Below, piece by piece: positions 13,125 to 48,838 of a stretch of 64,000 nucleotides of DNA. Position numbers and translations under genes: made by a program. Position 1 is the first letter of the stretch. The number at the start of each line of letters is the position of its first letter. Below the pieces are notes generated by a model, which saw only the letters and a list, made by a program, of their open reading frames with translations, did not search any database and was not told the origin of the DNA. The stretch lies in the sequence record ON190025.1. One strand, 5' to 3'.

Positions 13125-13213
13125 TGGCGGAAGCACTGGGAGTCGAACCCAGAGAACGCTATTAACGTCCGACACCTTAGCAGGGTGCTGTCATACCTTT
13201 AGACCATGCTTCC
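13125..13213 (-). tRNA. tRNA-Ser(GCT)
   Basis: Cloverleaf, long variable arm, CCA. Confidence 0.95.
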
Positions 13214-13252
13214 AACGTCTCATCAATTAATGGCATGCTGCTCTCATGCTCA

Positions 13253-13285
13253 GACACATATTTGCTCTTATTGCTGACGTGTGCC
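13253..13285 (-). ncRNA. Minimal hairpin copy of the motif
   Basis: GGCACA-CG-TCAGCAA-TAAGAGCAAATA-TGTGTC. Confidence 0.55.
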
Positions 13286-13368
13286 ACGCGCTTCGCAGAT
13301 CCACTTTAGATAATTTAAAGACCTAGCGGGACTCTTAGCAGGTCTATCCACTCTCTTTCGATTCGCGT
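13286..13368 (-). ncRNA. Structured spacer element
   Basis: ACGCG/CGCGT closing stem, AGACCT/AGGTCT hairpin, repeated AGTGGAT. Confidence 0.4.
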
Positions 13369-13381
13369 TGCTAAGTGAATT

Positions 13382-13458
13382 TGGTGCCCAACCCGAGATT
13401 CGAACTCGGAACTTCTAGTGTTTGAAACTAGTGCCTCTGCCAATTGGACTAGTTGGGC
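13382..13458 (-). tRNA. tRNA-Leu(CAA), short variable loop
   Basis: CTAGT-TTCAAAC-ACTAG anticodon arm, CCA. Confidence 0.92.
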
Positions 13459-13469
13459 TTGATTAAACT

Positions 13470-13570
13470 GCCGCGACTCTTTAATCCCTAACACCTGTCA
13501 GCTTTCGCTCGGCTGAGACCGTTTTTCAACGGCGGTAGTCTAGCTTCGTATAGAACGCGGCTTATGCTAG
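13470..13570 (-). ncRNA. ~100 nt pseudoknotted RNA of unknown class
   Basis: CTAGC/GCTAG stem crossed by GCCGCG/CGCGGC; two GAAA-loop hairpins. Confidence 0.6.
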
Positions 13571-13574
13571 AATT

Positions 13575-13651
13575 TGGTACGCACGGGCGGATTCGAACCG
13601 CCATCCCTGAGATTTTAAGCCTCATGCCTCTGCCAATTGGACCACGTGCGC
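13575..13651 (-). tRNA. tRNA-Leu(TAA), short variable loop
   Basis: TGAGG-CTTAAAA-TCTCA, CCA. Confidence 0.92.
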
Positions 13652-13653
13652 AT

Positions 13654-13727
13654 TGGAGCTCGAACAGGGAATCGAACCCTGACCTGCGGATTTGCAATCC
13701 GTTATACTGCCATTATACGATTCGAGC
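13654..13727 (-). tRNA. tRNA-Cys(GCA)
   Basis: Cloverleaf, U73, CCA. Confidence 0.95.
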
Positions 13728-13739
13728 ATAAATGTACTT

Positions 13740-13816
13740 TGGGGTGACAGACGGGGATCGAACCCGCATCTTCCGGAATCACAACCCGGGGGTATTTCCA
13801 CTTCACCCACTGCCAC
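13740..13816 (-). tRNA. tRNA-His(GTG), C73 but no encoded G-1
   Basis: CCGGG-TTGTGAT-TCCGG; base at -1 is T. Confidence 0.92.
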
Positions 13817-13942
13817 ACCAAAGTACACTTAAAAGTTTGCATTATGTCTTGGAGAAATAGATAAATCTACTAGCAACACCGCCGTCGCTACCTGCAATAC
13901 TTTGGGATGTTTACGACATCAAACGAATGCGCTTCCTGTGCA

Positions 13943-14182
13943 TTAATCAGTTTTCTTTAAGTAGATTCTATCAGGCGATAGTTCTCTTGTAAACATGTTT
14001 TTGAAATAAATTTCGATATCTGCTTCAGTCGTTGAAGACTCAATTTCAAGAGCACGCTCAAGAATCTTGTTACGCTTAAACCCAGCGCGCCAACAGTCAA
14101 ACATAAGTCTGTCCATTTTATTTAGCTTTTCGATTTGATTTGAGTTTACGTATTCATGAGTTTCAAGTAATACAGGCGTCAT
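13943..14182 (-). CDS. Hypothetical protein
   Basis: 79 aa ORF between tRNAs. Confidence 0.6.
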   Translation of the reverse strand: MTPVLLETHEYVNSNQIEKLNKMDRLMFDCWRAGFKRNKILERALEIESSTTEADIEIYFKNMFTRELSPDRIYLKKTD

Positions 14183-14205
14183 AATTTATTTCTCATCATA
14201 AAGAA

Positions 14206-14279
14206 TGGTAGTCCCTAGTGGAATCGAGCCACTTCTTTCTCTGTGTAAAAGAGACGTACTTCCATTATACTAAGGGACC
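14206..14279 (-). tRNA. tRNA-Val(TAC)
   Basis: Cloverleaf, T-loop CTCGATT, CCA. Confidence 0.92.
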
Positions 14280-14285
14280 AAAATT

Positions 14286-14359
14286 TGGAGCGGGTACACG
14301 GACTCGAACCGAGACGAACGACTTGGAAGGACGTCATGCTACCATTACATCATACCCGC
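14286..14359 (-). tRNA. tRNA-Gly(TCC)
   Basis: Cloverleaf, U73, CCA. Confidence 0.93.
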
Positions 14360-14370
14360 ATTGTTAATCT

Positions 14371-14526
14371 GAAGCGTCGAACAAATCACGTATTGCACGT
14401 AGATTCGTAAGCTCTACAGTAAGTGTTCTTATAAAGAACGGGTTGGTCTCATTCGCGAGACATTTTTCAACATATCGAATTTTATCGCGTATGTTGCCCT
14501 TGCTTAGTGTAAAGTAGTCATGCTTC
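14371..14526 (-). ncRNA. Candidate multi-hairpin RNA in tRNA spacer
   Basis: GAAGC/GCTTC closing stem with four hairpins (CAACATA/TATGTTG, GTCTC/GAGAC, GTTCT/AGAAC, GTAGA/TCTAC). Confidence 0.4.
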
Positions 14527-14548
14527 GTAACCTCTTTGTTTTTGAATT

Positions 14549-14624
14549 TGGAGGTGACACCGATACTCGAAATCGGATCTTACGCCGTATGAAAGCGTTG
14601 CTCTGCCACTTGAGCTACATCACC
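14549..14624 (-). tRNA. tRNA with CAT anticodon (Met-like), atypical U73
   Basis: ACGCT-TTCATAC-GGCGT, CCA. Confidence 0.85.
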
Positions 14625-14857
14625 AATTGCAGTAATTAACTCATTTAATCGCACACTGGCTGACACCATATATTCATGGTCTGAGTGAGGAACCACATAG
14701 TGGGTACTGTTACCTCTGCTTAGTTTTGATTGTTTTACATGACGATGACTAGAAACGTTCATAATAATGCCACGCGATACATCCTATATCGCTGCTAACA
14801 TCTAAGTTAGCGTATCCTGCCTTTCGGCTACAGTGTCGTTTCCGACGAATTAAGTAC

Positions 14858-15085
14858 AGACAATACCGAAGTGTTTTTTCGTCTTTTGCATAAATCGGAG
14901 TTGACTAGCTTATTGATTCTCAACAAGCAAATATCGTCTGTTTCAGCGACGCGCCTATCTGACTATTTCTAGACAGAGAGAATCTTTCCTTTCAAGCTGC
15001 GCCTAAGCAAGCTCAGGTTAAAATCAGCCCAGGTTAAGATCATCACTTCTTTTAAGTAATTTCAATTGTTTGCTGTATATTGTCT
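14858..15085 (-). ncRNA. ~228 nt structured RNA closed by the motif helix, paralogous to 12869-13113
   Basis: AGACAAT-AT-ACAGCAA...ATTGTCT; shares AAGACGAWAAAACACTTC (17/18) and AGTGATGA with the 12869 RNA. Confidence 0.75.
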
Positions 15086-15148
15086 CCCTCACCATGCTCG
15101 TGATATGCCGAAGCAAAGTATCATTCGTCGCATGATAAGAGCTTAATA

Positions 15149-15224
15149 TGGCACGCCGTATGAGATTCGAACTCATAACCCCATCCTTAGAAGGGACGTG
15201 CTCTTCCAATTGAGCTAACAGCGC
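15149..15224 (-). tRNA. tRNA-Arg(TCT)
   Basis: CGTCC-CTTCTAA-GGATG, CCA. Confidence 0.93.
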
Positions 15225-15298
15225 ATTGAAAAGATTCGAACCATGAACTAGTGTAGACGATGGTAGTAAAGAGAGTCTACGCTCATGTGTTCGAAATT

Positions 15299-15373
15299 TG
15301 GTGGACACGCAGGGAGTCGAACCCTATCTTCCTCATTGCAAGTGAGGCGCTTTCCCAATTAAGCTAACGGCCC
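15299..15373 (-). tRNA. tRNA-Ala(TGC), irregular acceptor stem
   Basis: G3.U70 present; inner acceptor pairs mismatched or bulged. Confidence 0.85.
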
Positions 15374-15380
15374 ATATTTT

Positions 15381-15590
15381 TTACAACTGTGTGATTGAAA
15401 TATATTCCCAACCGTATAAACCTTCAAGTTCTTCAATCGGCTCACTAACAATGTCAGAAATATATTCAGCAACTTTTGCTTCAACTTCTTCATTAGATAA
15501 TTCTTCACTAACGGAAAAAACATCTTCGTTATTGTTGCCACCGAAATCCCCACCAATGTCATATTCACACCATACAGAAATATAGTTCAT
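15381..15590 (-). CDS. Small acidic hypothetical protein
   Basis: MNYISVWCEYDIGG..., 69 aa. Confidence 0.65.
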   Translation of the reverse strand: MNYISVWCEYDIGGDFGGNNNEDVFSVSEELSNEEVEAKVAEYISDIVSEPIEELEGLYGWEYISITQL

Positions 15591-15614
15591 GTTATTCTCG
15601 CAGTTGTTTGAAAA

Positions 15615-15690
15615 TGGTGCCCTGACACGGATTCGAACCGCGAACCTGCTCATTACAAGTGAGCTGCACTGCCAGTTGTGCTATCAGGGC
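15615..15690 (-). tRNA. tRNA-Thr(TGT)
   Basis: Cloverleaf, CCA. Confidence 0.95.
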
Positions 15691-15696
15691 GTTACT

Positions 15697-15808
15697 GAGT
15701 GTTATTACTAGCGTCGTCCAGACCAGTGATACCAACACTGAAAGGGAATCGAACCCTAAACATTTCTTTCCGATAAGAATATTAGTAAATTGTTTGCTGA
15801 AAACACTC
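15697..15808 (-). ncRNA. YrlA-like circularly permuted tRNA mimic (candidate phage Y RNA)
   Basis: GAGTGT-TT-TCAGCAA...AGGG-TTCGATT-CCCT (T arm), CAGTG-TTGGTAT-CACTG (closed acceptor), GTC-TGGAC-GAC (D arm)...ACACTC. Confidence 0.75.
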
Positions 15809-15817
15809 TTCGGTATT

Positions 15818-15891
15818 TGGCTGGGGATAACAGATTCGAACTGATACCAACGCATTCAAAGTACGTTATGCTGCCTTTACACCAATCCCCA
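15818..15891 (-). tRNA. tRNA-Gln(TTG)
   Basis: U1-A72, G73, CCA. Confidence 0.95.
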
Positions 15892-15910
15892 ATTGTTCTT
15901 AAATTATCTT

Positions 15911-15986
15911 TGGCGGAACCGACGGGTTTCGAACCCGCTACCTTCTCCGTGACAGGGAGACATGCAACCACTTACACCTCGGCTCC
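15911..15986 (-). tRNA. tRNA-Asp(GTC)
   Basis: Cloverleaf, CCA. Confidence 0.95.
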
Positions 15987-16054
15987 CCAAAGACAACTTA
16001 AAGTAGTTGCTTTGTTTTTCAAGTTCACACTTAACGGTAGTGACTCTCCGAATT

Positions 16055-16130
16055 TGGCGCTTCATGTTGGACTCGAACCAACGACTCTCTGATTAACAGT
16101 CAGACACTCTACCAACTGAGTTAATGAAGC
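16055..16130 (-). tRNA. tRNA-Asn(GTT) copy 1
   Basis: Cloverleaf, CCA. Confidence 0.95.
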
Positions 16131-16131
16131 A

Positions 16132-16206
16132 TGGCGGGCGTGGAGAATTTCGAAATCTCGACTTGTCGGTTAACAGCCGACTACTCTGCCTCTGAGTTAC
16201 ACACCC
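16132..16206 (-). tRNA. tRNA-Asn(GTT) copy 2
   Basis: Cloverleaf, divergent body, CCA. Confidence 0.92.
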
Positions 16207-16218
16207 TTGAATTTAAAC

Positions 16219-16276
16219 AGTAATCCTTTTTGCTTTTTCCAAATAAAAGTTTTGTATTGTTTGCTGTAAGATTACT
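16219..16276 (-). ncRNA. 58 nt RNA consisting mainly of the motif
   Basis: AGTAATC-TT-ACAGCAA...GCAAAAAG-GATTACT. Confidence 0.7.
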
Positions 16277-16281
16277 TAAAC

Positions 16282-16355
16282 TGGCAGGGGCATAGAGATT
16301 CGAACTCTAACGAACGGGTTTGGAATCCGTCATGCTGCCTTTACATCATGCCCCT
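16282..16355 (-). tRNA. tRNA-Trp(CCA)
   Basis: Cloverleaf, CCA. Confidence 0.95.
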
Positions 16356-16361
16356 AAAATC

Positions 16362-16435
16362 TGGTAGTCCCTAAGAGAATCGAACTCTTACCAAGCGATT
16401 ATCGGTCGCACGCTCTACCGTTGAGCTAAGGGACT
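16362..16435 (-). tRNA. tRNA-Ile(GAT), C at position 33
   Basis: GCGA-CCGATAA-TCGC, CCA. Confidence 0.88.
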
Positions 16436-16499
16436 AAAGTGAGCACATTTCAGTGCTCGTGTTAATCGGTTAAGTGACTAAACTTCCCGGTTAACTAAT

Positions 16500-16598
16500 T
16501 GGCGGAAGACTAGGGATTCGAACCCTAACATCACCTCCCGGTGACCGACGGTTTTCAAGACCGTTGCCGCTACCCAGAATCTCTCGGCTAAGCCTTCC
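16500..16598 (-). tRNA. tRNA-Ser(TGA), enlarged D loop
   Basis: ACGGT-CTTGAAA-ACCGT, long variable arm, CCA. Confidence 0.92.
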
Positions 16599-16604
16599 AA
16601 TTAA

Positions 16605-16847
16605 TTATTTGTGTCTACCCCACATCAGCTTATCAAACTGACTAAGATATTCTTCAACTGCATCAGCATTCGCTTGACTGACAACCCAAACATTATCTTG
16701 TGATTTTGATTTGGTGTCTCTAACAGCGCCAAGTTTTTGCATCATGTTTCGATGTCTCTCTCTATCCATTGCACCACTAAAAAGTGAGCCAGAAACTCCG
16801 AAAGTAACATCTTTCGACTCGGTAATGAATTCATCAAATGTTTTCAT
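16605..16847 (-). CDS. Putative internal head protein (IP-like)
   Basis: MKTFDEFITE/S matches the T4 IP capsid-targeting sequence pattern; AAGGA SD; CTAAATA upstream. Confidence 0.75.
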   Translation of the reverse strand: MKTFDEFITESKDVTFGVSGSLFSGAMDRERHRNMMQKLGAVRDTKSKSQDNVWVVSQANADAVEEYLSQFDKLMWGRHK

Positions 16848-16893
16848 TGTAATTTTCCTTATTGCGTAAAACAATATTTAGTCGAAATAAATT

Positions 16894-16970
16894 TGGTTGC
16901 GTGGGGCTGGATTCGAACCAGCGTTCTCCGGCTTATGAGACCGACGAGATGACCACTTCTCTACCCCGCA
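16894..16970 (-). tRNA. Initiator-like tRNA-fMet(CAT) with a bulged acceptor stem
   Basis: Body resembles the bacterial initiator (TGCGGGG...CTCGTCGG.CTCATAA...CGCAACCA); one extra A in the 3' acceptor strand. Confidence 0.85.
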
Positions 16971-16980
16971 ATTATTCAAC

Positions 16981-17067
16981 AGCTTGCGTTCTTTGGTCTG
17001 TTTATCGCTGTCTGAACTGAGTTCGCCGAGCGATCAATAGATTAAGTTAAATTGCAGTATGCAAGCT
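16981..17067 (-). ncRNA. 87 nt motif-closed RNA
   Basis: AGCTTGC-AT-ACTGCAA...ATCGCT/AGCGAT hairpin...AAAGAAC-GCAAGCT. Confidence 0.7.
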
Positions 17068-17072
17068 AAAAC

Positions 17073-17158
17073 TGGTGGAGCGTAGAGGAATCGAACCTCT
17101 CTACCCGTTAAGGGTCAGGGATTTACAGTCCCCTGTCTCACCTTGAGACGTACGCTCC
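17073..17158 (-). tRNA. tRNA-Tyr(GTA)
   Basis: Long variable arm, CCA. Confidence 0.95.
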
Positions 17159-17164
17159 GTAATT

Positions 17165-17239
17165 TGGTTCTCCCGACGAGATTCGAACTCGCGCACTTCA
17201 CCTTGAAAGGGTGATGACCTACCGTTAGTCCACGGGAGA
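17165..17239 (-). tRNA. tRNA-Glu(TTC)
   Basis: TCACC-CTTTCAA-GGTGA, CCA. Confidence 0.93.
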
Positions 17240-17302
17240 ATTAAATTGTATATTGATTTGCAAGCTATCTAACTTACAAAGCGATACACAATGTATCTAA
17301 TT

Positions 17303-17379
17303 TGGTACGCCGCCCTGGACTCGAACCAGACACCTGAGAGTTAAAAGCTCCCTGCTCTTCCATGATGAGCTACCGACGC
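17303..17379 (-). tRNA. tRNA-Lys(TTT) copy 1
   Basis: Cloverleaf, CCA. Confidence 0.95.
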
Positions 17380-17390
17380 ATTATAAAATA

Positions 17391-17465
17391 TGGTGGGTCG
17401 CAAGAGATTCGAACTCTCACCGGTCTGGTTAAAAGCCAGATGTACTACCGTTATACGAACGACCC
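17391..17465 (-). tRNA. tRNA-Lys(TTT) copy 2
   Basis: Cloverleaf, divergent body, CCA. Confidence 0.93.
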
Positions 17466-17554
17466 AGATTTGATTTTCACGTTAAGAGCGTTTGCTAAAT
17501 AACTCAAAACTAAAACCCCTTGCTTGATTTAACTCTTACAAACAAGCTATAATA

Positions 17555-17629
17555 TGGTGCACCCCCTCGGAATCGAACCGAGCACTGCGGGACTTCAATC
17601 CGCCGCTTTTCCTGATAAGCTAAGGGTGC
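17555..17629 (-). tRNA. tRNA-Phe(GAA)
   Basis: GCGGA-TTGAAGT-CCCGC, CCA. Confidence 0.9.
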
Positions 17630-17630
17630 A

Positions 17631-17708
17631 TGGTACGCAAGAAGAGATTCGAACTCTTAACTTCTGGTTTCTAAGACCAGTGCCTCTGCCAGATTGGGCT
17701 ACTTGCGC
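17631..17708 (-). tRNA. tRNA-Leu(TAG), short variable loop
   Basis: CTGGT-CTTAGAA-ACCAG, CCA. Confidence 0.92.
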
Positions 17709-17726
17709 ATTAAATTTTGTAAACTT

Positions 17727-17857
17727 CTTTTCTTCATTGTACATGATGTTTATATCGTTGTAAACATCTTTTTTTGAAAAACTTTTCATTCGTTTTTGAA
17801 TGATGTTTCGCTTTTCTTCATTGTACATGATGTTTATATCGTTGTAAACATCTTTTT
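17727..17857 (-). promoter_or_regulatory. Exact 47 bp direct repeat (17727-17773, 17811-17857), each a sigma70-type promoter
   Basis: TTTACA-17 nt-TACAAT in each copy, with inverted repeat GATGTTTA...TAAACATC over the -35. Confidence 0.8.
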
Positions 17858-18063
17858 GAATTTATTTTGAAGAACTTAACGTTTTCATTTTCTATGTGTT
17901 AATATTAACACTCGCTCAAGACATCATAAACACTAATTTATGAAAAAGTTCGTTAAATTCTATCATCTCGACAGTACTTAACGAGATACGGTCCTAAGCG
18001 TATCAATTCGTAGAAGCAGTTTCGGGAATGTGCGAAAGCGAGCTTCAATCAAACAACACTAAC

Positions 18064-18139
18064 TGGCACCCAATACAAGATTCGAACTTGTAACCTTCGC
18101 CTTCGTAGGGCGCTGCTCTTCCAATTGAGCTAATCGGGC
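18064..18139 (-). tRNA. tRNA-Arg(ACG)
   Basis: Cloverleaf, CCA. Confidence 0.95.
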
Positions 18140-18147
18140 ATTAAAAC

Positions 18148-18224
18148 TGGTCCGTGACAAGCGATTCGAACGCTTAACTTCTCCGCCCCAAACGGAGTAC
18201 TCTACCAGATTGAGCTAGTCACGG
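18148..18224 (-). tRNA. tRNA-Pro(TGG) copy 1
   Basis: Cloverleaf, CCA. Confidence 0.93.
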
Positions 18225-18233
18225 ATTTTAAAT

Positions 18234-18307
18234 TGGTCGGGACGAAGAGACTCGAACTCTTACCACATGCTCCCAAAGCATGAACGCTACCTTTACGCCA
18301 CGTCCCG
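18234..18307 (-). tRNA. tRNA-Pro(TGG) copy 2
   Basis: Cloverleaf, divergent body, CCA. Confidence 0.93.
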
Positions 18308-18327
18308 TTTGTTCTTTAACTTTGTTT

Positions 18328-18357
18328 ATCATACTCTGTAATCAAAGTACGTTAAAC
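18328..18357 (-). promoter_or_regulatory. Probable sigma70-type promoter for the downstream tRNAs
   Basis: TTTAAC-17 nt-TATGAT just downstream of a terminator. Confidence 0.5.
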
Positions 18358-18384
18358 AAAATTTCTTAACTTTCTTACGCCCAT

Positions 18385-18408
18385 AAAAAAGGACGCTATT
18401 TGCGTCCT
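18385..18408 (-). terminator. Rho-independent terminator
   Basis: GGACGC/GCGTCC stem plus T6. Confidence 0.8.
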
Positions 18409-18437
18409 CAAGTATACTTCTATGTTATACTATCGGA

Positions 18438-18551
18438 CTACAAGAGGGTATCCCACTTCTGGTTCGCAATCGGATTCGCTAGATACACGAATTCTGAGCG
18501 CAGAAAATCGCTGCGTAATGTCTCAGATGAATGTGTAAACGAATGCGTCAT
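18438..18551 (-). CDS. Possible 37 aa peptide
   Basis: MTHSFTHSSETLRSDFLRSEFVYLANPIANQKWDTLL, GAGAG upstream, terminator downstream. Confidence 0.35.
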   Translation of the reverse strand: MTHSFTHSSETLRSDFLRSEFVYLANPIANQKWDTLL

Positions 18552-18678
18552 TGAATGCTCTCTTGAAATAAAAATTAAAATTTGTTTTGTTTCTTTATAG
18601 TACTTATAACACTAAATCTGACGATTTGCGGTATTTTCGCAGAAAATTGAAAAAAATTATCAATTTTCTGCGATTTTA

Positions 18679-18915
18679 TTAACCTAAGTGTTTTCGCTTG
18701 TTCATTTCAGCAAGAATTTCGTCGTTGTAGTGCTTATTAAGCTCAACGAATTTCTTGTGCTGATCTGAAGTCAATTCGTTTGTATCGTTCAGATGCTTCA
18801 AAAACCCAAGAGGCTTACGAAACGACTTGCGATATTCATTCAGACGCTCATCTGTTAGATTGCGCAATTGTTTCGGAGTCAGTAACGTTTTGTTGATATT
18901 AAATGTTCCGCTCAT
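18679..18915 (-). CDS. Hypothetical protein
   Basis: MSGTFNINK..., 78 aa, GAGG SD. Confidence 0.65.
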   Translation of the reverse strand: MSGTFNINKTLLTPKQLRNLTDERLNEYRKSFRKPLGFLKHLNDTNELTSDQHKKFVELNKHYNDEILAEMNKRKHLG

Positions 18916-18941
18916 GTTATACCTCACTAGTTTATCAAAAA

Positions 18942-19057
18942 TGGTAGTCGGGGCTGGATTCGAACCAGCGACCACGTGCTTAACAGGCAATTGAAGGAGT
19001 GCTGGAGCGATACTTGTCAGTATCATTCTTCGTGCTCTACCACTGAGCTACCCGACT
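18942..19057 (-). ncRNA. tRNA-shaped RNA, anticodon loop replaced by a motif-bearing insert (CCA present)
   Basis: AGTCGGG/CCCGACT-A-CCA, normal D and T arms; insert GATACT-GACA-AGTATC-GCT-CCAGCAC. Confidence 0.75.
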
Positions 19058-19093
19058 ATGAATTATTTAACTTTGAATTTCAAATTTCGATAT

Positions 19094-19354
19094 TCAAAGT
19101 TTCGTTTGTCTTTTTTTACTGTAATACGTATCCCAATCAATAGAAACAGGACAGTTCTTACTACCCACACGAGATAAGAAAACGTCGTGAGTGTCTTTGT
19201 AAGCTTCTCTGAGAGACTTTACTTGTTTCTCATGATGAGTTATGTACTCAGCACACGCTTTGTTGTACTCAGCTTTAGAGAAGCGTTCATCGCCCGTGAA
19301 ATTACCGTTTAGATACGGTCGAATAACACGAACACGTTCTTTAGACCATCCCAT
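19094..19354 (-). CDS. Hypothetical protein
   Basis: 86 aa ORF. Confidence 0.65.
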   Translation of the reverse strand: MGWSKERVRVIRPYLNGNFTGDERFSKAEYNKACAEYITHHEKQVKSLREAYKDTHDVFLSRVGSKNCPVSIDWDTYYSKKRQTKL

Positions 19355-19378
19355 ACTAAAACTATTTTCAATTTATTT

Positions 19379-19456
19379 TGGTGACCCCAACAGGACTCGA
19401 ACCTGTAACCTACCGATTATGAGTCGGTTGCTCTAACCAAGTTGAGCTATAGGGCC
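19379..19456 (-). tRNA. tRNA(CAT), most like Ile2 (lysidine type)
   Basis: GGCCC acceptor and GACTCATAATC arm resemble bacterial tRNA-Ile2. Confidence 0.85.
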
Positions 19457-20887: not shown

Positions 20888-21010
20888 ATCTTAACATCAT
20901 TTCAGTGTAAGTCAACAACTTTTTTCAAATATTTCATCGAGTTGAAAGTTTGTGTTCTGTCTCTCGACTCGATGAAATACATTCTACATGCTTTTCAGAA
21001 TAAGTCAACA
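20888..21010 (-). promoter_or_regulatory. Two tandem early promoters driving the tRNA/ncRNA cluster
   Basis: AAAAAGTTG-TTGACT-16 nt-TAAGAT (20888-20915) and AAAAAGTTG-TTGACT-16 nt-TAGAAT (20981-21008). Confidence 0.8.
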
Positions 21011-21025
21011 ACTTTTTGAAAGTTT

Positions 21026-21280
21026 TTATACTGAAAGAATGATACCGCTTTCTGTCTCACCTCGTTCAAGCGCAGCGTGCTTGATTTGAAGCTGAGATAC
21101 AGCTTGTTGAAGCTCAGTGATAGCTTTATCGTAAAGTTTGTTGTTCTCTTTAAGTAAAGCAATCTGATCGGTCTGCATACCGATGATATACGTCAATAAT
21201 ACAACGTTCTCTTCAGTAGTTAGAGTTTCGGGAGCTTCATTGTACTTCTTTAATACTGCTTCAGTAGATAAATCAGTCAT
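21026..21280 (-). CDS. Coiled-coil hypothetical protein
   Basis: MTDLSTEAVLKK..., 84 aa, overlaps the 57B stop. Confidence 0.7.
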   Translation of the reverse strand: MTDLSTEAVLKKYNEAPETLTTEENVVLLTYIIGMQTDQIALLKENNKLYDKAITELQQAVSQLQIKHAALERGETESGIILSV

Positions 21281-21728
21281 TACTATCAACCCAATTTAAA
21301 TCAAGTGGTTCAAGATATTCATCAACAAGCCGAACTTCAGCGTTGACGGGCATAGGTGTGATCGCGTCGTCATAAGACAACGTAACGTGAGGGGTATAGT
21401 CAGGGTAGTCGTGAGTACCACCGATAGAGATAAGATCATCGTGACGTTCTACAAGTTCTGGACATACCATCTTAGCAACAACTGCATATTTGCCGTCTTG
21501 CGTTTTCCAACAGTCGATATGTTCAACAGTAGCAACGAAAGTGGTATCGACAACAGGTACATCAATTTGCTTACGACTATAAAGCACAGTCACGTGAAAT
21601 TTATCTGGTTCTAACGGATTTTTTAGACGAAGCGTTTTCTGCAATCGAACTAACTCTTGCTTACTCGCCTCGTCTAATCTGATACCAACGTAAGTTCCCT
21701 GACTTTCAAGGAACTTAGATAGTTTCAT
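21273..21728 (-). CDS. 57B: 2H-phosphoesterase, T4 gp57B homologue
   Basis: Two HxT motifs (FHVTVLYS, PHVTLSY); position beside 57A. Confidence 0.85.
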   Translation of the reverse strand: MKLSKFLESQGTYVGIRLDEASKQELVRLQKTLRLKNPLEPDKFHVTVLYSRKQIDVPVVDTTFVATVEHIDCWKTQDGKYAVVAKMVCPELVERHDDLISIGGTHDYPDYTPHVTLSYDDAITPMPVNAEVRLVDEYLEPLDLNWVDSND

Positions 21729-21994
21729 TATTCAGCGTCTTTTTCTTGTTCGCCGTCGCCTTCAGCAGGACGTTCAGCTTTACCGGTTAGAATTGCGATT
21801 TCGTCAACGTAGTTCTGTAGAGAACTTGCTTGCGTCTGATCGAAATCGAGTAGTTGAGCTAGTACACCCACGAACTGACCAAAAGAATTGCGCTCTTCTT
21901 GAAGAGTCTCTTGTAGGTCAAAGGTACGCACTTTAAGATCTTTGATTTGTGCGTCTTTCTGTTCGATTACTTGTTCAGCAGTTTGTTGTGACAT
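21728..21994 (-). CDS. 57A: Tail fibre chaperone gp57A-like
   Basis: Short coiled-coil ORF between gene 1 and 57B. Confidence 0.7.
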   Translation of the reverse strand: MSQQTAEQVIEQKDAQIKDLKVRTFDLQETLQEERNSFGQFVGVLAQLLDFDQTQASSLQNYVDEIAILTGKAERPAEGDGEQEKDAE

Positions 21995-21998
21995 GTTT

Positions 21999-22643
21999 TC
22001 ACCTTAAATTTAAATTATCAATTTGTTCATACAGTTCTTCAAGAGAACCGTTATTGTCTATTTGAATAGCGTCTTCAATAAAACCCAATTCGGTATCGCT
22101 AATGTGATTAGATGCCAGAGAACCTTCTCGGTTAACTTGTAACATCGTGCCACCAAGCTCATATACTAAATTCATTTCGTTTTCAAAACGAACATCAGTA
22201 ATTATAAAGAGCAAGTCGGGGTTGTTAAACACTAACTGATTGTATTTATCACGTGCATAATTGATCCAATGCTGATCGTTAAGAGAACGTGCAACATCAG
22301 TACCTGTCATTTGTAAGAGATCTCGAATACTAAAAAGACCAGTGTGTGGAAGTAGAGTAAAGTATACGTAATCATAATCAGCATCTACGTTTGCGTAGTC
22401 ACAGCACTTCAATACAAGTTCAATTGCTTCGTCTAACGTAAATACTGGAACTTCGCGGTCACAATCTGTTTGACCGTCTATGTCTGCATAATCATAGCCA
22501 TATTCTTTTAACCCAATGAACAACCCTTCTTTAATCGGGTCGGCAAATTTGTAAATGTAAGTGCTATCACTATGAGATTTTTTAATGGCAGCAGCAAGGG
22601 TATCTTTCCCTGAACGCTTTTGTCCATTGATTCCTATAATCAT
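21999..22643 (-). CDS. 1: Deoxynucleoside monophosphate kinase
   Basis: IIGINGQKRSGKDT P-loop, FADPIK, LLQMTGTD, ITDVRFENE. Confidence 0.92.
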   Translation of the reverse strand: MIIGINGQKRSGKDTLAAAIKKSHSDSTYIYKFADPIKEGLFIGLKEYGYDYADIDGQTDCDREVPVFTLDEAIELVLKCCDYANVDADYDYVYFTLLPHTGLFSIRDLLQMTGTDVARSLNDQHWINYARDKYNQLVFNNPDLLFIITDVRFENEMNLVYELGGTMLQVNREGSLASNHISDTELGFIEDAIQIDNNGSLEELYEQIDNLNLR

Positions 22644-22731
22644 AATGAGTTACCTATTAATAGTGTGTTTCGTCTCACGATTATACGACAGATCTGGTGA
22701 TTTCTAAACAATGCGACAAGGTGCCTATTCT

Positions 22732-22830
22732 CTAATATTACTAATACCTCTAACTTCACTAAAACTACTAATACTACTAAGATGATGCCCAATTTTTGGG
22801 CCTCACACCAAATTCTGCCGCTTCGCTCTA
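22732..22830 (-). repeat. Origin-like element A: hairpin plus six TTAG at 9 bp period
   Basis: CTAA on plus strand at 22732, 22741, 22750, 22759, 22768, 22777; hairpin GAGGCCC-AAAAATT-GGGCATC. Confidence 0.8.
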
Positions 22831-22841
22831 GATTCAGATAC

Positions 22842-22863
22842 AAAAAAGCCCCGTAAGGGGCTT
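22842..22863 (-). terminator. Terminator after gene 3
   Basis: GCCCC/GGGGC stem plus T6. Confidence 0.8.
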
Positions 22864-22872
22864 AATTGCTTT

Positions 22873-23409
22873 CTATGAACCCATATAGGGTGTTATTACT
22901 TCTTCTTTGCCATCGACTTTATGAATCATTTCAAAATATGAATATTCAAACTCGACATCACAAGTTACGACTTCAACATCACCAGATTCAGTATAGTTCC
23001 ATTCTACAGCACTGAGTGACTTTGGGAATGCATTGACAAAACGATATGTTGCTACAATTTTATCTTTGTTGTTGTCTAGAACATGTAGAAGCATAGTAAC
23101 TGGAACAATCCCGTCACTTGTACTAGCACCTGTTGGGTTGTTCATTGTGATCAACCATCTATACAGCTCGGCATACGTCCGCATTTCTTCATCGACTATA
23201 AATTGAATCGAAAGATCGTCATATGATGTACCAGAACCTGCAACATGGTTATTTGCTAGTTTGGCATACTTCGGACCACGAGTAATGCTTGCAATTTCCA
23301 TCGTAACACCCGGGATAGTGGCAGTTTGTATCTGCCACTGGAACGTTTGAGTTGCGTTATTATCAGGGATGTCGATTCGGAAATTATTCTTCATCGTTAA
23401 GTTTTTCAT
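22873..23409 (-). CDS. 3: Tail tube terminator / sheath stabiliser gp3
   Basis: Tube-protein fold pattern LSIQFIVDEEM...FVNAFPKSLS; synteny with gene 1. Confidence 0.85.
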   Translation of the reverse strand: MKNLTMKNNFRIDIPDNNATQTFQWQIQTATIPGVTMEIASITRGPKYAKLANNHVAGSGTSYDDLSIQFIVDEEMRTYAELYRWLITMNNPTGASTSDGIVPVTMLLHVLDNNKDKIVATYRFVNAFPKSLSAVEWNYTESGDVEVVTCDVEFEYSYFEMIHKVDGKEEVITPYMGS

Positions 23410-25382
23410 TAATTCACCGTTCTTCTATTTGGTGAAGGCACTTTCGCTTCACTGTTTACGCTTAACGGTCTATTGAAGTTCGTTGTATTCTGAACTGAAT
23501 TGACCGCATTGTTCACGAAGTTAGTTCCAACCTCTTTCGTTTGCTGTGCTGCTCGAAATGCTGCTTCTCGCGCTGCGACAGCTTCTAAGATGATTGAACG
23601 CTTAACTTCTTGCATTGGCTTAATGATCCCCTCGTTGATCATACGTTGACGTTCAGCCGCTACAATTGCGTCTTCTGCTATTTGCTTCTTCTCGACTTCA
23701 GCTTGCAAGAACTTGTCAAGAGATTCGGCAGACGTTGCTAAATTCTTAGCAGGGTCTTTGATAGCATCAGCAGCGTTCTTAGCACCGTCTATAACCGCTT
23801 GTGCTGTATTCTTAGCCCCATCAACGATCATATCCCCAGCTTTGCCTAGATAGTCTGTTTGATAACGCGCATTGAGTCTTTCACGAACTTCAGCTTTGTC
23901 AGCATCTAGTTTCGCTCTTTTACCTTCAATATCAGCATCTGCTATGAACTTGTCCATGCCTTCTGAACGCATCCAGTCTGGTAATGCATTTAATGCATCA
24001 ACTACAAATGATTTAACGTTTAACATCAAGTCATCTATTGCTAACATAAGCAATCTAAACGAATCGGGAATTGATAACCAACCAGCTATGATTTTGTTAA
24101 TTGCATTAACGTACATTCTGAAAGCTTTCTTAACGAAAGATACCACTGCATCGAAGCCAGATACAATTCCATCAACTGCACCTTCTGGTACTGCTTCTTG
24201 AATATTTTCACTGACAATACCGAACCATTCTCCGATACCTCGAACCATATCGCTAAACCAATTCGACACTATATTAAACAACATTTCCCGTTTTTCGGGG
24301 TCGCTGAAAATACTTTTCAATGCAACGAAGATTCGGTCGATTTCTTCTTCAAATAGCTTGTAAATACCATAACCTGCAAGCATACCTGCTAGTGCGAGTG
24401 GGTTTAACATGATTGAAATCATACGACCTAGTCCTAAGAATGTTTGACGAACAACTGCCCACATCCATTTTTTGACCGTACCTCTCATGTCAGTTGCAAG
24501 ATCTTTGATTATTCCACCTGTCCCTTGACTAAACTTACCAAACCCTAAGAGTATGCTTGAGGCAATGCGACCTAATCTACCGAATTTACTAGCTGTTGAT
24601 GCAGCATCTGCCATAGATGTTGAAAACTTTACTAATTGCCCGCCTAGCATTATTAGACCTACACCAACTAGTCTGAACAACTTGGCAATCCACCCTAGCT
24701 TTTCACCTGTTAAGTGATTCGCGATTCGACGTAGATCACTCGCTTGGTTGCGTTGCACTTTCATGTTTTCTTTGTAACGAAATTGCTCAGTTTTACGAGC
24801 ACGAGTATCAGTAACGACTTGATATGCAAATATCTTCTTGTATAACGCGCTTATAAAGCCCACAGTAAGCGGAGAGTTGTTACCCGCACCGTTCGTCAAG
24901 AAGCTATTTAAATCGTCGGCAGTCGTCTTCTGAAGCCCGATTATTCGCTTCATGTCGTTGACTCTGAAGATCAGTCGTTCAAACCATCGAGTAAACCCCT
25001 CCTGCATACGAGCAAACTGCATTTTTGCAGTCAATCGCATCTCTTGAATACCGCGATCAATTCTAGACAAGTGACCTTTGAAATCTAAAGTAGTTTTGAT
25101 GATATCAGTTAGTGATATAATCGAAGCGCGGACTCTGTTTGATGTCTGTTCGAAGTTTTCAATGACGCGCTGGAATAGATTTTTTTGTTGTGCAACTGCC
25201 TTTTCGTTAGTTTTGAAGACCGATTGCATTGTTTCGAGCATCGTTGACGTTGTTATATCAATGTTGTTGATATGACGAGCCACACGCTGCATCGTGTAAA
25301 CTTCAGGTCGGTCTTCTTGTTGGAGAATCAAATGATCTAATCTTCCGATTATCTCATTCATCTTTTTTTCATCAGCCGCCAT
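23409..25382 (-). CDS. 29: Baseplate hub / tape-measure protein gp29-like
   Basis: 657 aa helical protein with hydrophobic segments in the baseplate hub cluster. Confidence 0.65.
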   Translation of the reverse strand: MAADEKKMNEIIGRLDHLILQQEDRPEVYTMQRVARHINNIDITTSTMLETMQSVFKTNEKAVAQQKNLFQRVIENFEQTSNRVRASIISLTDIIKTTLDFKGHLSRIDRGIQEMRLTAKMQFARMQEGFTRWFERLIFRVNDMKRIIGLQKTTADDLNSFLTNGAGNNSPLTVGFISALYKKIFAYQVVTDTRARKTEQFRYKENMKVQRNQASDLRRIANHLTGEKLGWIAKLFRLVGVGLIMLGGQLVKFSTSMADAASTASKFGRLGRIASSILLGFGKFSQGTGGIIKDLATDMRGTVKKWMWAVVRQTFLGLGRMISIMLNPLALAGMLAGYGIYKLFEEEIDRIFVALKSIFSDPEKREMLFNIVSNWFSDMVRGIGEWFGIVSENIQEAVPEGAVDGIVSGFDAVVSFVKKAFRMYVNAINKIIAGWLSIPDSFRLLMLAIDDLMLNVKSFVVDALNALPDWMRSEGMDKFIADADIEGKRAKLDADKAEVRERLNARYQTDYLGKAGDMIVDGAKNTAQAVIDGAKNAADAIKDPAKNLATSAESLDKFLQAEVEKKQIAEDAIVAAERQRMINEGIIKPMQEVKRSIILEAVAAREAAFRAAQQTKEVGTNFVNNAVNSVQNTTNFNRPLSVNSEAKVPSPNRRTVN

Positions 25383-48620: not shown

Positions 48621-48648
48621 GGGTGAGATTGATTTCTCACCCTTTTTT
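48621..48648 (+). terminator. Terminator after gene 12
   Basis: GGGTGAGA/TCTCACCC plus T6. Confidence 0.85.
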
Positions 48649-48652
48649 ATAT

Positions 48653-48753
48653 TAGCGCAGCGAAGAAAATGGCAAGAGGCGGAAAAATTCCGTCTCATCT
48701 TAGTAGTATTAGTGGTTTTAGTGAAGTTAGGGATATTAGTATGATTAGTATTA
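48653..48753 (+). repeat. Origin-like element B, inverted homologue of element A
   Basis: TTAG at 48700, 48709, 48718, 48727, 48736, 48745; hairpin GAGGCGG-AAAAATT-CCGTCTC. Confidence 0.8.
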
Positions 48754-48830
48754 AATACGTGTTTAAAACCATGAATATGCTTGCTATTATTAACACATAA
48801 AGACATTCCCTCCCTGTTTCTTTGTATTGC

Positions 48831-48838
48831 TATAAATA
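48831..48838 (+). promoter_or_regulatory. T4 late promoter (wac)
   Basis: TATAAATA. Confidence 0.8.

What the first reader, a model, noticed from the sequence alone, without database searches (positions are those of the whole stretch)
22732..22830. Origin-like element A: covarying hairpin plus six TTAG iterons at exact 9 bp spacing
Seen on minus, just after the gene 3 terminator: GCGAAGC, a hairpin GAGGCCC-AAAAATT-GGGCATC, then CATC and TTAG every 9 bp six times. A homologue lies 26 kb away in the opposite orientation (48653-48753) with the same loop and compensatory stem changes. Known: T4 oriE uses iterons, and GCGAAGC forms a very stable DNA mini-hairpin. Inference: one of a pair of divergently oriented replication origins or helicase/primase loading sites.
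Basis: partly seen in the sequence, partly recalled or inferred. Interest (0 to 1): 0.76.

Follow-up and report, generated by a model that had tools for sequence, protein, structure and literature searches.

The report
Six-copy hairpin-plus-TTAG-repeat element in vibriophage
The reported hairpin followed by six TTAG repeats is real, but it is one of six near-identical, evenly spread, unannotated intergenic elements kept at the same genome positions in all KVP40-like Vibrio phages; it may mark replication start sites, which sequence alone cannot prove.

Summary
The window is Vibrio phage PVA23 (KVP40-like, T4-type), record bases 62001-126000. After the gene 3 terminator, on the minus strand, come GCGAAGC, a GC hairpin with loop AAAAATT, ATC, then six TTAG units exactly 9 bp apart. 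A copy lies at 48655-48753 on the plus strand.

It is not a pair. PVA23, VS2 and nt-1 each carry six copies at the same six gene junctions. All copies are intergenic and point the same way as the flanking genes. Their spacing is more even than chance (P about 0.006). The core evolves more slowly than the neighbouring genes and stays in place where a neighbour gene has been swapped.

Each array is the local AT-rich extreme and almost lacks C on the sense strand. Five of six loci have a conserved promoter just downstream (four T4-type early, one TTGACA-type). One copy sits at uvsY, where T4 has oriF.

No Rfam family, paper, host copy, DnaA box or RepEB relative was found.

Best reading, confidence about 0.35: six dispersed, strand-specific unwinding and protein-loading sites, that is origin-like elements. 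Rivals are an operator or roadblock array and an RNA leader element. The element is unannotated and its function is untested.

The parts
22846..22863 (-). Intrinsic terminator after gene 3 (tail completion protein); its T run extends to about 22841
   Evidence: 7-pair stem, 5 GC pairs, T run. Conserved in KVP40, VS2 and nt-1.
22820..22826 (-). GCGAAGC motif in the 5' part of element A (possible mini-hairpin)
   Evidence: Present at loci c1-c4 in PVA23 (degenerate at c3), nt-1 and VS2, and in the 1.081.O copies at c2-c4. Absent at c5, at c6 of VS2 and nt-1, and in three metagenomic copies. The 7-mer occurs 47 times in the genome.
22784..22804 (-). Hairpin of element A: GAGGCCC / AAAAATT / GGGCATC
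   Evidence: On 28 copies, 87% of cells pair against 42-58% for slid controls; two pairs change on both sides.
22727..22780 (-). Array of six 9-nt units, each starting with TTAG (element A)
   Evidence: GC 25%, 0.5th percentile of 60-bp windows in the genome.
22680..22708 (-). T4-type early promoter of gene 1 (TTTAGA, 17 nt, TATAAT), 18 nt beyond the array
   Evidence: The TGTTTAGA and GTATAAT blocks are invariant in five phages while the DNA between them varies. The -35 type GTTTAC is the T4-like early consensus (PMC1524935).
48621..48642 (+). Intrinsic terminator after the gp12-like tail fibre gene
48655..48665 (+). Degenerate GCGCAGCGAAG, counterpart of the GCGAAGC motif (element B)
48676..48696 (+). 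Hairpin of element B: GAGGCGG / AAAAATT / CCGTCTC (one G-T pair)
48700..48753 (+). Array of six 9-nt TTAG units (element B)
48762..48790 (+). Early-type promoter-like site (TTTAAA, 17 nt, TATTAT) after element B
   Evidence: Conserved in VS2 and nt-1 but deleted in 1.081.O.
48831..48838 (+). T4-type late promoter TATAAATA of wac (fibritin; ATG at 48878)
   Evidence: Invariant in four phages.

Best explanation
Each copy is a cis-acting, strand-specific site on the phage chromosome where the duplex opens and a protein is loaded. The most likely role is one of six dispersed replication start or replisome-loading sites.

Proposed mechanism:
1. The 54-bp array is the easiest DNA to melt in its neighbourhood.
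2. Negative supercoiling builds up behind RNA polymerase leaving the early promoter just downstream. At the two loci without an upstream terminator (c1 and c6), transcription can also enter the element from the upstream gene. Either would open the array.
3. The sense strand then folds the GC hairpin, and where present the GCGAAGC mini-hairpin. This fixes one edge of the bubble.
4. The sense strand displays five to seven TTAG units at 9-nt spacing as unstructured, C-free single strand.
5. An unidentified phage or host protein binds these units cooperatively and recruits helicase and primase.

Shown here: the anatomy, copy number, synteny, conservation, base composition, flanking terminators and promoters, and retention of the element where neighbouring genes are swapped.

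Inferred: opening of the duplex, single-strand binding, and any link to replication.
For: - Copy number and position: exactly six copies in PVA23, nt-1 and VS2, at the same six junctions. There are no partial copies elsewhere in PVA23.
- Spacing: gaps of 26-56 kb are more even than random (P 0.004-0.007).
- uvsY: one copy lies between gp35 and uvsY. T4 oriF is the uvsY promoter region and oriG lies in gene 34 (PMC3016281).
- Melting: the arrays fall in the 0.1-2.8th percentile of GC content and are at or next to the local minimum at five of six loci.
- Strand asymmetry: variable array positions have C 2.4% against G 21.5%. G-T pairs occur only on the sense strand of the hairpin.
- Conservation: core identity is 80-84% between any two copies across genera. 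Flanking proteins are 62-72% identical.
- Anchor behaviour: the element stays while the downstream gene (c1) or the upstream gene (c6) is replaced by an unrelated one.
- Phase: changes in unit number keep the 9-nt phase.
- Promoters: conserved promoters lie just downstream at five loci, four T4-type early and one TTGACA-type.
Against: - There are no replication data of any kind.
- No initiator-like gene lies beside any copy.
- The adjacent promoters point away from the element, whereas in T4 oriF and oriG the unwinding element lies downstream of the promoter.
- At c1 the array carries the ribosome site and start codon of the next gene, so there it is certainly in mRNA.
- Strict co-orientation with transcription (6 of 6) is predicted more directly by a transcriptional or RNA role.
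- The spacing and uvsY arguments are post hoc.
- Hairpin covariation rests on one or two events, and two metagenomic copies break the stem.
- T4 origins share no motif, so a consensus origin would be unusual for this group.
Confidence: 0.35

Rival explanations
1. Duplex-DNA operator or roadblock array. A small phage DNA-binding protein polymerises on the contiguous 9-bp units. Candidates are a ribbon-helix-helix type protein, like those that bind MetJ boxes or omega heptads. It would switch the adjacent early promoters, or block elongation from the upstream gene in one direction, as mycobacteriophage stoperators do.
For: - All copies are intergenic and co-oriented with transcription.
- Five of six lie 0-33 nt upstream of a conserved early-type promoter. 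At c4 and c5 the last unit abuts or overlaps the -35.
- At c1 and c6 the element sits between two genes with no terminator, which is where a roadblock would act.
- Contiguous short direct repeats are typical of cooperative repressors (own knowledge).
Against: - The distance to the -35 varies (0, 2, 13, about 26, about 33 nt) with no helical phase.
- The promoters already have good -35 and -10 hexamers.
- The c1 target gene differs between PVA23 and nt-1, yet the element is kept.
- 1.081.O lost the early-type promoter at c3 but kept the element.
- The hairpin, its both-sided stem changes and the avoidance of C on one strand are not needed for duplex binding.
- The even spacing is unexplained.
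Confidence: 0.25
2. RNA element. The hairpin followed by an unstructured, C-free (UUAGNNNNN)x6 tract is bound by an RNA-binding protein. This resembles the T4 gene 32 operator, or the UAG repeats bound by ring proteins such as TRAP and HutP. Alternatively it serves as an RNase E entry site. It would control translation or decay of transcripts that enter the downstream gene.
For: - Orientation always matches the mRNA.
- G-U pairs are allowed only on the sense strand.
- C avoidance keeps the tract unstructured.
- At c1 the Shine-Dalgarno sequence and start codon lie in units 5-6 in three phages.
- At c1 and c6 there is no terminator upstream.
Against: - Four of six copies sit directly after strong intrinsic terminators and before the next promoter, so they would be transcribed only by read-through.
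- The folding z-scores are weak (-2.5 and -1.3).
- There is no Rfam match.
- The 9-nt period fits no ring protein I know (TRAP 5-6 nt, HutP 7 nt; own knowledge).
- Even spacing and retention despite gene swaps are unexplained.
Confidence: 0.15
3. Another genome-level DNA signal used at a few fixed sites. Examples are a strand-specific nick site (as in T5), a sliding-clamp loading site for late transcription, a packaging start signal, or a chromosome-organising site.
For: A small fixed number of copies, even spacing, strand specificity and strong conservation. Copy c3 lies 78 nt before a late promoter.
Against: Nothing specific points to any of these. T4-type phages package by headful without a required site (own knowledge). 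Only two of six copies have a late promoter within 400 bp.
Confidence: 0.12
4. A recombination module, like the PeSL promoter and stem-loop cassettes, that persists because it mediates cassette exchange and has no other function.
For: - Breakpoints of gene replacement coincide with the edges of c1 and c6.
- 1.081.O has a tandem duplication at c2.
- Its copies share phage-specific substitutions.
- PVA23 c6 has acquired a c1-like 5' part.
Against: - Number and positions are fixed across three phages of two genera (PVA23, VS2, nt-1), unlike PeSLs, which are numerous, variable and concentrated in hyperplastic regions (PMC4122927).
- Four copies lie in conserved core regions.
- About 75 nt are under strong purifying selection, including the phase of the units.
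Confidence: 0.08
5. A small protein-coding gene, as annotated over the element in several records.
For: An open frame of 67 codons runs through element A (22640-22843, TTG start). Hypothetical proteins are annotated over copies in nt-1, K566, 6E35.1a and the D48x phages.
Against: - Two of three frames are open simply because the units carry TAG in only one frame.
- There is no ATG or ribosome site in copy A.
- The same frame is closed by TGA in copy B.
- Changes fall on all codon positions.
- At c1 real genes end and start inside the element in other frames.
Confidence: 0.01

Closest known systems
T4 ori(uvsY)=oriF and ori(34)=oriG (R-loop origins: middle promoter plus downstream unwinding element)
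   Same: One copy lies at the gp35/uvsY junction next to the uvsY promoter. There are several dispersed sites per genome, each associated with a promoter.
   Different: T4 origins share no motif (PMC3016281). Here all six sites share about 80 conserved nt. The element lies upstream of the promoter, not downstream. The promoter is early-type, without a MotA box. No function has been tested.
T4 oriE 'iterons' and RepEA/RepEB
   Same: Evenly spaced direct repeats near a proposed origin, in the same general genome region as copy A (genes 1-5).
   Different: The T4 repeats have a 24-nt period and are the coding repeats of the gp5 beta-helix, inside gene 5. RepEB relatives were found essentially only in enterobacterial T-even phages, and no Vibrio phage is in the listed groups. 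The role of these repeats in T4 is itself unproven.
Iteron origins and their AT-rich unwinding repeats (lambda ori, RK2 and R6K origins, oriC 13-mers), and DnaA-trios
   Same: Phased short direct repeats, AT-rich, with base composition specific to one strand. Every third triplet is TAG, and the array opens with TAG TAG TAT TAG, the letters of the DnaA-trio consensus (PMC8287927).
   Different: No DnaA box lies within 150 bp. The GC cluster is on the wrong side of the trios for a DnaA unwinding module. The period is 9, not 3. No Rep-like gene was found beside any copy.
Single-strand initiation signals and primosome assembly sites (G4 and phiX174 complementary-strand origins, plasmid ssi), and the d(GCGAAGC) mini-hairpin
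   Same: An orientation-specific element of 70-100 nt with hairpins on one strand. GCGAAGC is present in most copies. This comparison rests on my own knowledge.
   Different: Those signals act on single-stranded genomes or lagging strands and have no 9-nt repeat array. GCGAAGC is dispensable here and is a common 7-mer in this genome.
Baculovirus homologous regions (hrs)
   Same: Several near-identical repeat elements spread around a large viral genome in intergenic DNA. They are proposed both as origins and as enhancers of early genes (own knowledge). This is the best analogy for the distribution.
   Different: An unrelated virus and unrelated sequence. The hrs are clusters of 30-bp palindromes bound by IE-1.
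Mycobacteriophage L5 stoperators
   Same: Asymmetric intergenic sites, all in one orientation relative to transcription, spread over the genome (own knowledge).
   Different: Stoperators are 13 bp long, occur about 30 times per genome and are bound by the lysogenic repressor. Here the element is about 100 bp, has a hairpin and an array, occurs six times, and belongs to a lytic phage.
PeSL and PmSL cassettes of T4-like phages (PMC4122927)
   Same: Conserved intergenic motifs with a stem-loop in nt-1 and KVP40. Gene replacement breakpoints coincide with the element edges at c1 and c6.
   Different: PeSLs contain a sigma-70-type promoter, a stem-loop and a Shine-Dalgarno sequence. They are numerous and concentrated in hyperplastic regions. 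This element has no promoter inside and six fixed copies. That paper does not mention TTAG repeats.
T4 gene 32 translational operator
   Same: A folded nucleation structure followed by an unstructured tract of repeated short A/U-rich motifs that reaches the start codon, as at c1 (own knowledge).
   Different: It is a single copy in front of gene 32, with a pseudoknot and UUAAA motifs. Here most copies lie upstream of promoters.

Membership tests
Iteron-type (initiator-dependent) replication origin | Array of phased direct repeats | tested here: met
   Five to seven TTAG units at exactly 9 bp in 28 copies. Insertions and deletions are whole units.
Iteron-type (initiator-dependent) replication origin | Adjacent AT-rich unwinding region | tested here: inconclusive
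   The array itself is the local AT-rich extreme (0.1-2.8th percentile). No separate unwinding element was identified, and opening was not tested.
Iteron-type (initiator-dependent) replication origin | Cognate initiator protein, usually encoded nearby | tested here: inconclusive
   The neighbours of c1, c5 and c6 are an Alc homologue, a SprT-like protein, a glutaredoxin, a methyltransferase and proteins of unknown function. None is Rep-like. The rest of the proteome was not screened.
Iteron-type (initiator-dependent) replication origin | Supports replication (copy-number peak, plasmid amplification) | not testable with these tools
   This needs infection experiments.
T4 oriF/oriG-type R-loop origin | MotA-dependent middle promoter whose transcript primes synthesis | tested here: not met
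   The adjacent promoters are early-type (GTTTAn, 17 nt, TATAAT) and have no TGCTT box at -30.
T4 oriF/oriG-type R-loop origin | Unwinding element downstream of that promoter | tested here: not met
   The element lies upstream of the promoter. The region downstream is the gene leader and coding sequence.
T4 oriF/oriG-type R-loop origin | Position at uvsY or gene 34 | tested here: met
   Copy c4 lies between gp35 (next to gp34) and uvsY in PVA23, VS2, nt-1 and 1.081.O.
T4 oriE iterons with RepEA/RepEB | Evenly spaced 12-nt repeats inside gene 5 | tested here: not met
   The T4 repeats have a 24-nt period and lie within the gene 5 coding sequence. Here the period is 9 nt and the element is intergenic.
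T4 oriE iterons with RepEA/RepEB | RepEB homologue present | tested here: not met
   tblastn with T4 RepEB found 625 records, all listed groups enterobacterial or Pseudomonas. No Vibrio phage appears in the listed groups.
DnaA-trio basal unwinding module | At least three NAN trios, consensus 5'-TAG-3' | tested here: met
   The array opens with TAG TAG TAT TAG. Definition from PMC8287927.
DnaA-trio basal unwinding module | DnaA box within about 16 bp, on the 3' side of the trio strand | tested here: not met
   No DnaA box with one mismatch or fewer lies within 150 bp of any of the six copies. The nearest is 160 bp away, inside a gene. The GC-rich part lies on the 5' side.
PeSL / PmSL cassette | Sigma-70-like (or Mot-box) promoter plus stem-loop plus Shine-Dalgarno sequence within the motif | tested here: not met
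   The scan finds promoters only outside the element. Unit 5, the only -10 candidate, is one of the two most variable units.
PeSL / PmSL cassette | Many copies, mostly in hyperplastic regions, variable between relatives | tested here: not met
   Six fixed, syntenic copies, four of them in core regions.
Any Rfam RNA family | Match to a curated covariance model | tested here: not met
   The best hits lie on the terminator, score far below the gathering thresholds and have E of 0.075 or more.
Rolling-circle (HUH Rep) origin | Hairpin with the nick-site nonamer in the loop, flanked by iterons | tested here: not met
   The loop is AAA or AAAAATT. TAGTATTAG-like strings occur in the array, not in the loop. 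No search for an HUH gene was made.
Protein-coding gene | Conserved reading frame with start signal | tested here: not met
   The frame is closed in copy B, there is no ATG, and changes fall at all codon positions.

The most novel reading that the evidence does not exclude
KVP40-like phages start DNA replication at six sequence-defined, near-identical origins. At each one a supercoil-opened, C-free array of 9-nt TTAG units next to a GC hairpin is read as single-stranded DNA by a so far unknown initiator. This would be a consensus multi-origin system in a T4-type phage, a group in which origins are thought to share no motif.
Probability: 0.3. Interest if true: 0.8.

Novelty: new variant of a known kind. 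Interest (0 to 1): 0.6.

Why it matters
How T4-type phages choose where to start replication is still poorly defined. Even in T4 only two origins are understood, and no shared motif exists.

A compact element present six times at fixed positions, in phages that grow on the laboratory host Vibrio natriegens (nt-1), gives a directly testable candidate. It also gives a handle for finding the protein that reads it.

If it turns out to be a regulatory operator or an RNA element instead, it would define a missing layer of the KVP40 gene-expression programme. The KVP40 genome paper reported, as I recall, that no early or middle transcription signals could be identified.

On the practical side, several database records annotate spurious 'hypothetical proteins' across the element.

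Tried and rejected
- Rfam scan of the region: only sub-threshold noise on the terminator.
- Generic five-unit TTAG pattern in IMG/VR: 120 or more unrelated hits, mostly giant-virus coding repeats. Uninformative.
- Specific 18-mer in IMG/VR: only KVP40, VH7D and one chance contig.
- Specific pattern in metagenomes: five true copies and eight chance hits.
- Same pattern in 185,579 bacterial and archaeal genomes: nine hits in unrelated taxa, about the chance number, and none in Vibrio. There is therefore no host copy.
- Literature: four full-text searches found no description of the element. The KVP40 genome paper is not held.
- Promoter inside the element: rejected.
- Small ORF: rejected.
- DnaA-trio module: rejected.
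- T4 oriE and RepEB homology: rejected.
- PeSL identity: rejected.
- Concerted evolution as the main reason for similarity: not supported overall. Core identity is 83% between loci of the same genome, 84% between genomes at the same locus, and 80% otherwise. The 1.081.O copies do share phage-specific changes.
- Neighbouring genes as candidate binders: nothing suggestive.
- Not done: a screen for MotA and AsiA; analogous repeats in Aeromonas phages such as Aeh1 or 65.

Full report
**Identity of the window.** The region 21500-24000 is 100% identical to Vibrio phage PVA23 (ON190025.1, Schizotequatrovirus, a KVP40-like T4-type phage). It is 99% identical to VH7D, ValKK3 and others, and 84% to KVP40. 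A window coordinate plus 62000 gives the PVA23 record coordinate.

Element A lies between gene 3 (tail completion protein) and gene 1 (dNMP kinase), both on the minus strand. Element B lies between a gp12-like tail fibre gene and wac (fibritin), both on the plus strand.

**The observation.** Read on the minus strand, element A has these parts in order:
- the gene 3 terminator, 22846-22863, with a T run;
- GCGAAGC, 22820-22826;
- a hairpin, 22784-22804 (GAGGCCC, loop AAAAATT, GGGCATC);
- ATC;
- six 9-nt units, each beginning with TTAG, 22727-22780.

Element B follows its own terminator (48621-48642). It has a degenerate GCGCAGCGAAG, the hairpin GAGGCGG / AAAAATT / CCGTCTC (48676-48696) and six units (48700-48753).

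Four TTAG at 9-bp spacing occur nowhere else in the window and in none of 100 shuffles. The two elements are the only long inverted repeat in the 64 kb (85 nt, 81%).

**It is a family of six.** A blastn search with the 111-nt element finds 51 Vibrio phage records, typically with six places each. In the complete PVA23 genome the four-unit pattern occurs at exactly six loci, which I call c1 to c6:

| Locus | Record position | Strand | Note |
|---|---|---|---|
| c1 | 35.8 kb | + | |
| c2 | 84.7 kb | - | element A |
| c3 | 110.7 kb | + | element B |
| c4 | 137.5 kb | - | |
| c5 | 180.2 kb | + | |
| c6 | 226.5 kb | + | |

The hairpin motif and the array never occur apart from each other.

I built a covariance model from the six copies. 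It finds six copies in nt-1 (genus Mylasvirus) and six in VS2. It also finds copies at four of the same junctions in the parts of 1.081.O that I fetched. There the gene 3/gene 1 spacer holds two tandem copies and the c5 copy is degenerate. Further copies occur in KVP40, F86, K566 and 6E35.1a and on four marine metagenome contigs.

The six junctions are the same everywhere:
- c1: a conserved 142-aa ORF, then a variable gene;
- c2: gp3, then gp1;
- c3: gp12, then wac;
- c4: gp35, then uvsY;
- c5: a SprT-like protein, then glutaredoxin followed by gp24 and gp55;
- c6: a variable ORF, then a conserved 174-aa ORF upstream of a methyltransferase and rIIA.

Every copy points the same way as its flanking genes.

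**Conservation.** In 28 aligned copies several features are nearly invariant: the loop AAAAATT, the 3' arm of the stem, ATC, the TTAG of units 1-5, and most of units 1 and 2.

Core identity between any two copies, within or between genera, is 80-84%. The flanking proteins are only 62-72% identical between PVA23 and nt-1. Published whole-genome identity for nt-1 against KVP40 is 66% or more over 82% of the genome (PMC4122927).

Changes in length come as whole units:
- nt-1 c3 lacks exactly one unit;
- the 1.081.O copies have seven or more units;
- K566 c3 has TTCG or TTCA in three units but keeps the phase.

**The hairpin.** It folds as up to nine pairs around an AAA loop, with modest energy. 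Across the 28 copies, 87% of cells pair against 42-58% for slid controls. Two pairs change on both sides (C-G to G-C). This variant is seen in c2 of PVA23 and KVP40 and in c6 of PVA23, so it reflects one or two events.

G-T pairs occur at three positions and are compatible only with pairing of the sense strand. The 3' arm alternates between CCGTCTC and CCGCATC in many genomes and loci. The 5' arm is less conserved, and two metagenomic copies break the stem. The stem is therefore supported, but not strongly.

**The array.** Folded onto one 9-nt unit, positions 1-4 are TTAG (98-100%). Positions 5-9 read T>A>G, R, R>T, W, A>T.

At these variable positions C is 2.4% while G is 21.5%. The genome has C 19.6% and G 21.7%. 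The sense strand therefore avoids C at positions that otherwise vary freely.

The arrays are among the most AT-rich 60-bp windows of the genome (0.1-2.8th percentile). At five of the six loci they are at or within a few bases of the local AT-rich extreme.

**Surroundings.** At c2, c3, c4 and c5 a strong intrinsic terminator precedes the element by 5-30 nt.

Downstream of these four copies lies a promoter whose hexamers are invariant across phages while the DNA around them varies. The form is (T)GTTTAn, 17 nt, then TATAAT or TATACT or TATTAT. This is the -35 type of T4-like early promoters (PMC1524935). The distance from the last unit to the -35 is 0, 2, 13 or about 26 nt, so it is not fixed.

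At c6 a conserved small hairpin follows, then TTGACA, 17 nt, TACTAT (TAATAT in VS2). At c3 the wac late promoter TATAAATA comes after that. In 1.081.O the early-type promoter at c3 is deleted but the element remains.

At c1 there is neither terminator nor promoter. The upstream ORF ends inside the 5' part or just before the hairpin. The downstream gene starts inside unit 5 or 6:
- PVA23: GGAG in unit 5 and GTG in unit 6, followed by a lipoprotein signal peptide;
- VS2: GGAG in unit 5 and ATG in unit 6;
- nt-1: ATG in unit 5.

**The element as anchor.** At c1 the upstream proteins of PVA23 and nt-1 are 62% identical, but the downstream proteins are unrelated. At c6 the downstream proteins are 72% identical, but the upstream ones are unrelated. 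The element is kept while a neighbour is replaced, and the breakpoints lie at its edges.

**Distribution.** The six gaps in PVA23 are 48.9, 25.9, 26.9, 42.6, 46.3 and 56.3 kb. Among 200,000 random placements of six points on the circle:
- 0.7% have a smallest gap at least as large;
- 0.6% have a largest gap at most as large;
- 0.4% have a spread as small.

This test is post hoc. Because the loci are syntenic, the other genomes are not independent evidence.

**What it is not.**
- No Rfam family matches.
- It is not a PeSL. Those cassettes contain a promoter, are numerous and vary between relatives.
- It is not a gene. The frame is closed in copy B, has no start signal, and real genes abut the element at c1.
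- It is not borrowed from the host. There is no copy in any Vibrio genome, and the nine hits in 185,579 genomes match the chance expectation.
- It is not a DnaA unwinding module. The array opens with TAG TAG TAT TAG, the DnaA-trio letters. However, no DnaA box lies within 150 bp, and the GC cluster is on the wrong side.
- It is not homologous to T4 oriE. The T4 'iterons' are 24-nt-period coding repeats of the gp5 beta-helix inside gene 5. RepEB relatives were found in enterobacterial T-even phages, with no Vibrio phage listed.

T4 itself has only 50 bp between genes 3 and 1, and genes 12 and wac overlap, so it has no room for such an element at those junctions.

**Interpretation.** Three readings remain.

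(a) An origin-like unwinding and loading site. This accounts for:
- the fixed small number and even spacing of the copies;
- the copy at uvsY (T4 oriF is the uvsY promoter and oriG lies in gene 34);
- the array being the local melting point;
- the strand-specific features (C avoidance, sense-only G-T pairs, GCGAAGC);
- retention of the element when neighbouring genes change.

A promoter firing away from the element would drive negative supercoiling into it. I rate this reading about 0.35.

(b) A duplex operator or polar roadblock. This accounts best for the strict co-orientation with transcription and the closeness to promoters. It fails on the variable distance and phase, the swapped target gene at c1, the hairpin, and the C avoidance. 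I rate it about 0.25.

(c) An RNA leader element. This accounts best for c1 and for the sense-strand signs. Four copies, however, sit between a terminator and the next promoter. I rate it about 0.15.

Other genome-level signals rate about 0.12. A purely recombinational module rates about 0.08. A gene rates about 0.01.

A dual role, as enhancer and origin like the baculovirus homologous regions, is possible.

**Verdict.** It is a conserved six-copy cis-element family specific to KVP40-like vibriophages. It is unannotated, or mis-annotated as small ORFs, and I found no description of it in the literature I could search. The origin idea is the best single reading but is unproven. The 'pair' and the oriE analogy are wrong.

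Noticed in passing
window 13125-19456 (minus strand): A cluster of 28 tRNA genes lies downstream of gene 1, 57A and 57B. None is annotated in the PVA23 record, which shows only a few small ORFs in this stretch.
   Followed up: partly
window 17727-17773 and 17811-17857: An exact 47-nt direct duplication inside the tRNA cluster. Read on the minus strand it contains GTTTAC, about 17 nt, then TACAAT, a T4-type early promoter. Related copies lie at 20900-20934 and 20993-21027.
   Followed up: no
L002:35896-35921 (PVA23 record 35896-35921): PVA23_89 is annotated as starting at GTG 35919. An in-frame GTG 18 nt upstream, inside TTAG unit 6 and with GGAG in unit 5, gives a complete lipoprotein signal peptide ending in LAGC. 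The start is probably mis-annotated.
   Followed up: partly
L139:4097-4237 (nt-1 ORF204); L174:230-403 (K566_0421); L175:240-356 (6E35.1a p0208); window 22640-22843: Small 'hypothetical proteins' are annotated, or callable, across the element in several records. They are very probably artefacts of the stop-free frames of the TTAG array.
   Followed up: yes
L163:2116-2390 (phage 1.081.O): Two tandem copies of the whole element lie in the gene 3/gene 1 spacer, about 165 bp apart. The 1.081.O copies share phage-specific substitutions in units 2-4.
   Followed up: partly
All copies: 3' arm of the hairpin (window 22784-22790 and 48690-48696): The 3' arm exists in two states, CCGTCTC and CCGCATC. 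They are mixed among loci and genomes (about 15 against 13 of 28 copies). Each state gives one non-Watson-Crick pair at a different stem position. The reason is unknown.
   Followed up: no
L006:26570-26650 (PVA23 c6 downstream); alignment A11: An almost invariant 80-nt stretch follows copy c6. It has a small hairpin (AACTTGA..AAGTT), then TTGACA, 17 nt, TACTAT or TAATAT. It resembles the published PeSL cassettes.
   Followed up: no
L005:28674-29177 (PVA23_267): A clear Alc homologue (Pfam PF17527, E 1e-77) in a phage lineage reported not to modify cytosine. The same genome carries 7-deazaguanine synthesis genes (QueC, QueD, GTP cyclohydrolase I). How Alc would spare phage DNA here is an open question.
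   Followed up: no
L177:6903-7070 (T4 gene 5): The T4 oriE 'iterons' coincide with the 24-nt (8-codon) repeats that encode the gp5 C-terminal beta-helix. Their regular spacing may simply reflect protein structure.
   Followed up: partly
L163:33316-33509 (1.081.O): 'CRISPR spacers' are annotated inside the tail sheath stabiliser gene. They are evenly spaced at 42 nt and are most likely a coding tandem repeat, not a CRISPR array.
   Followed up: no
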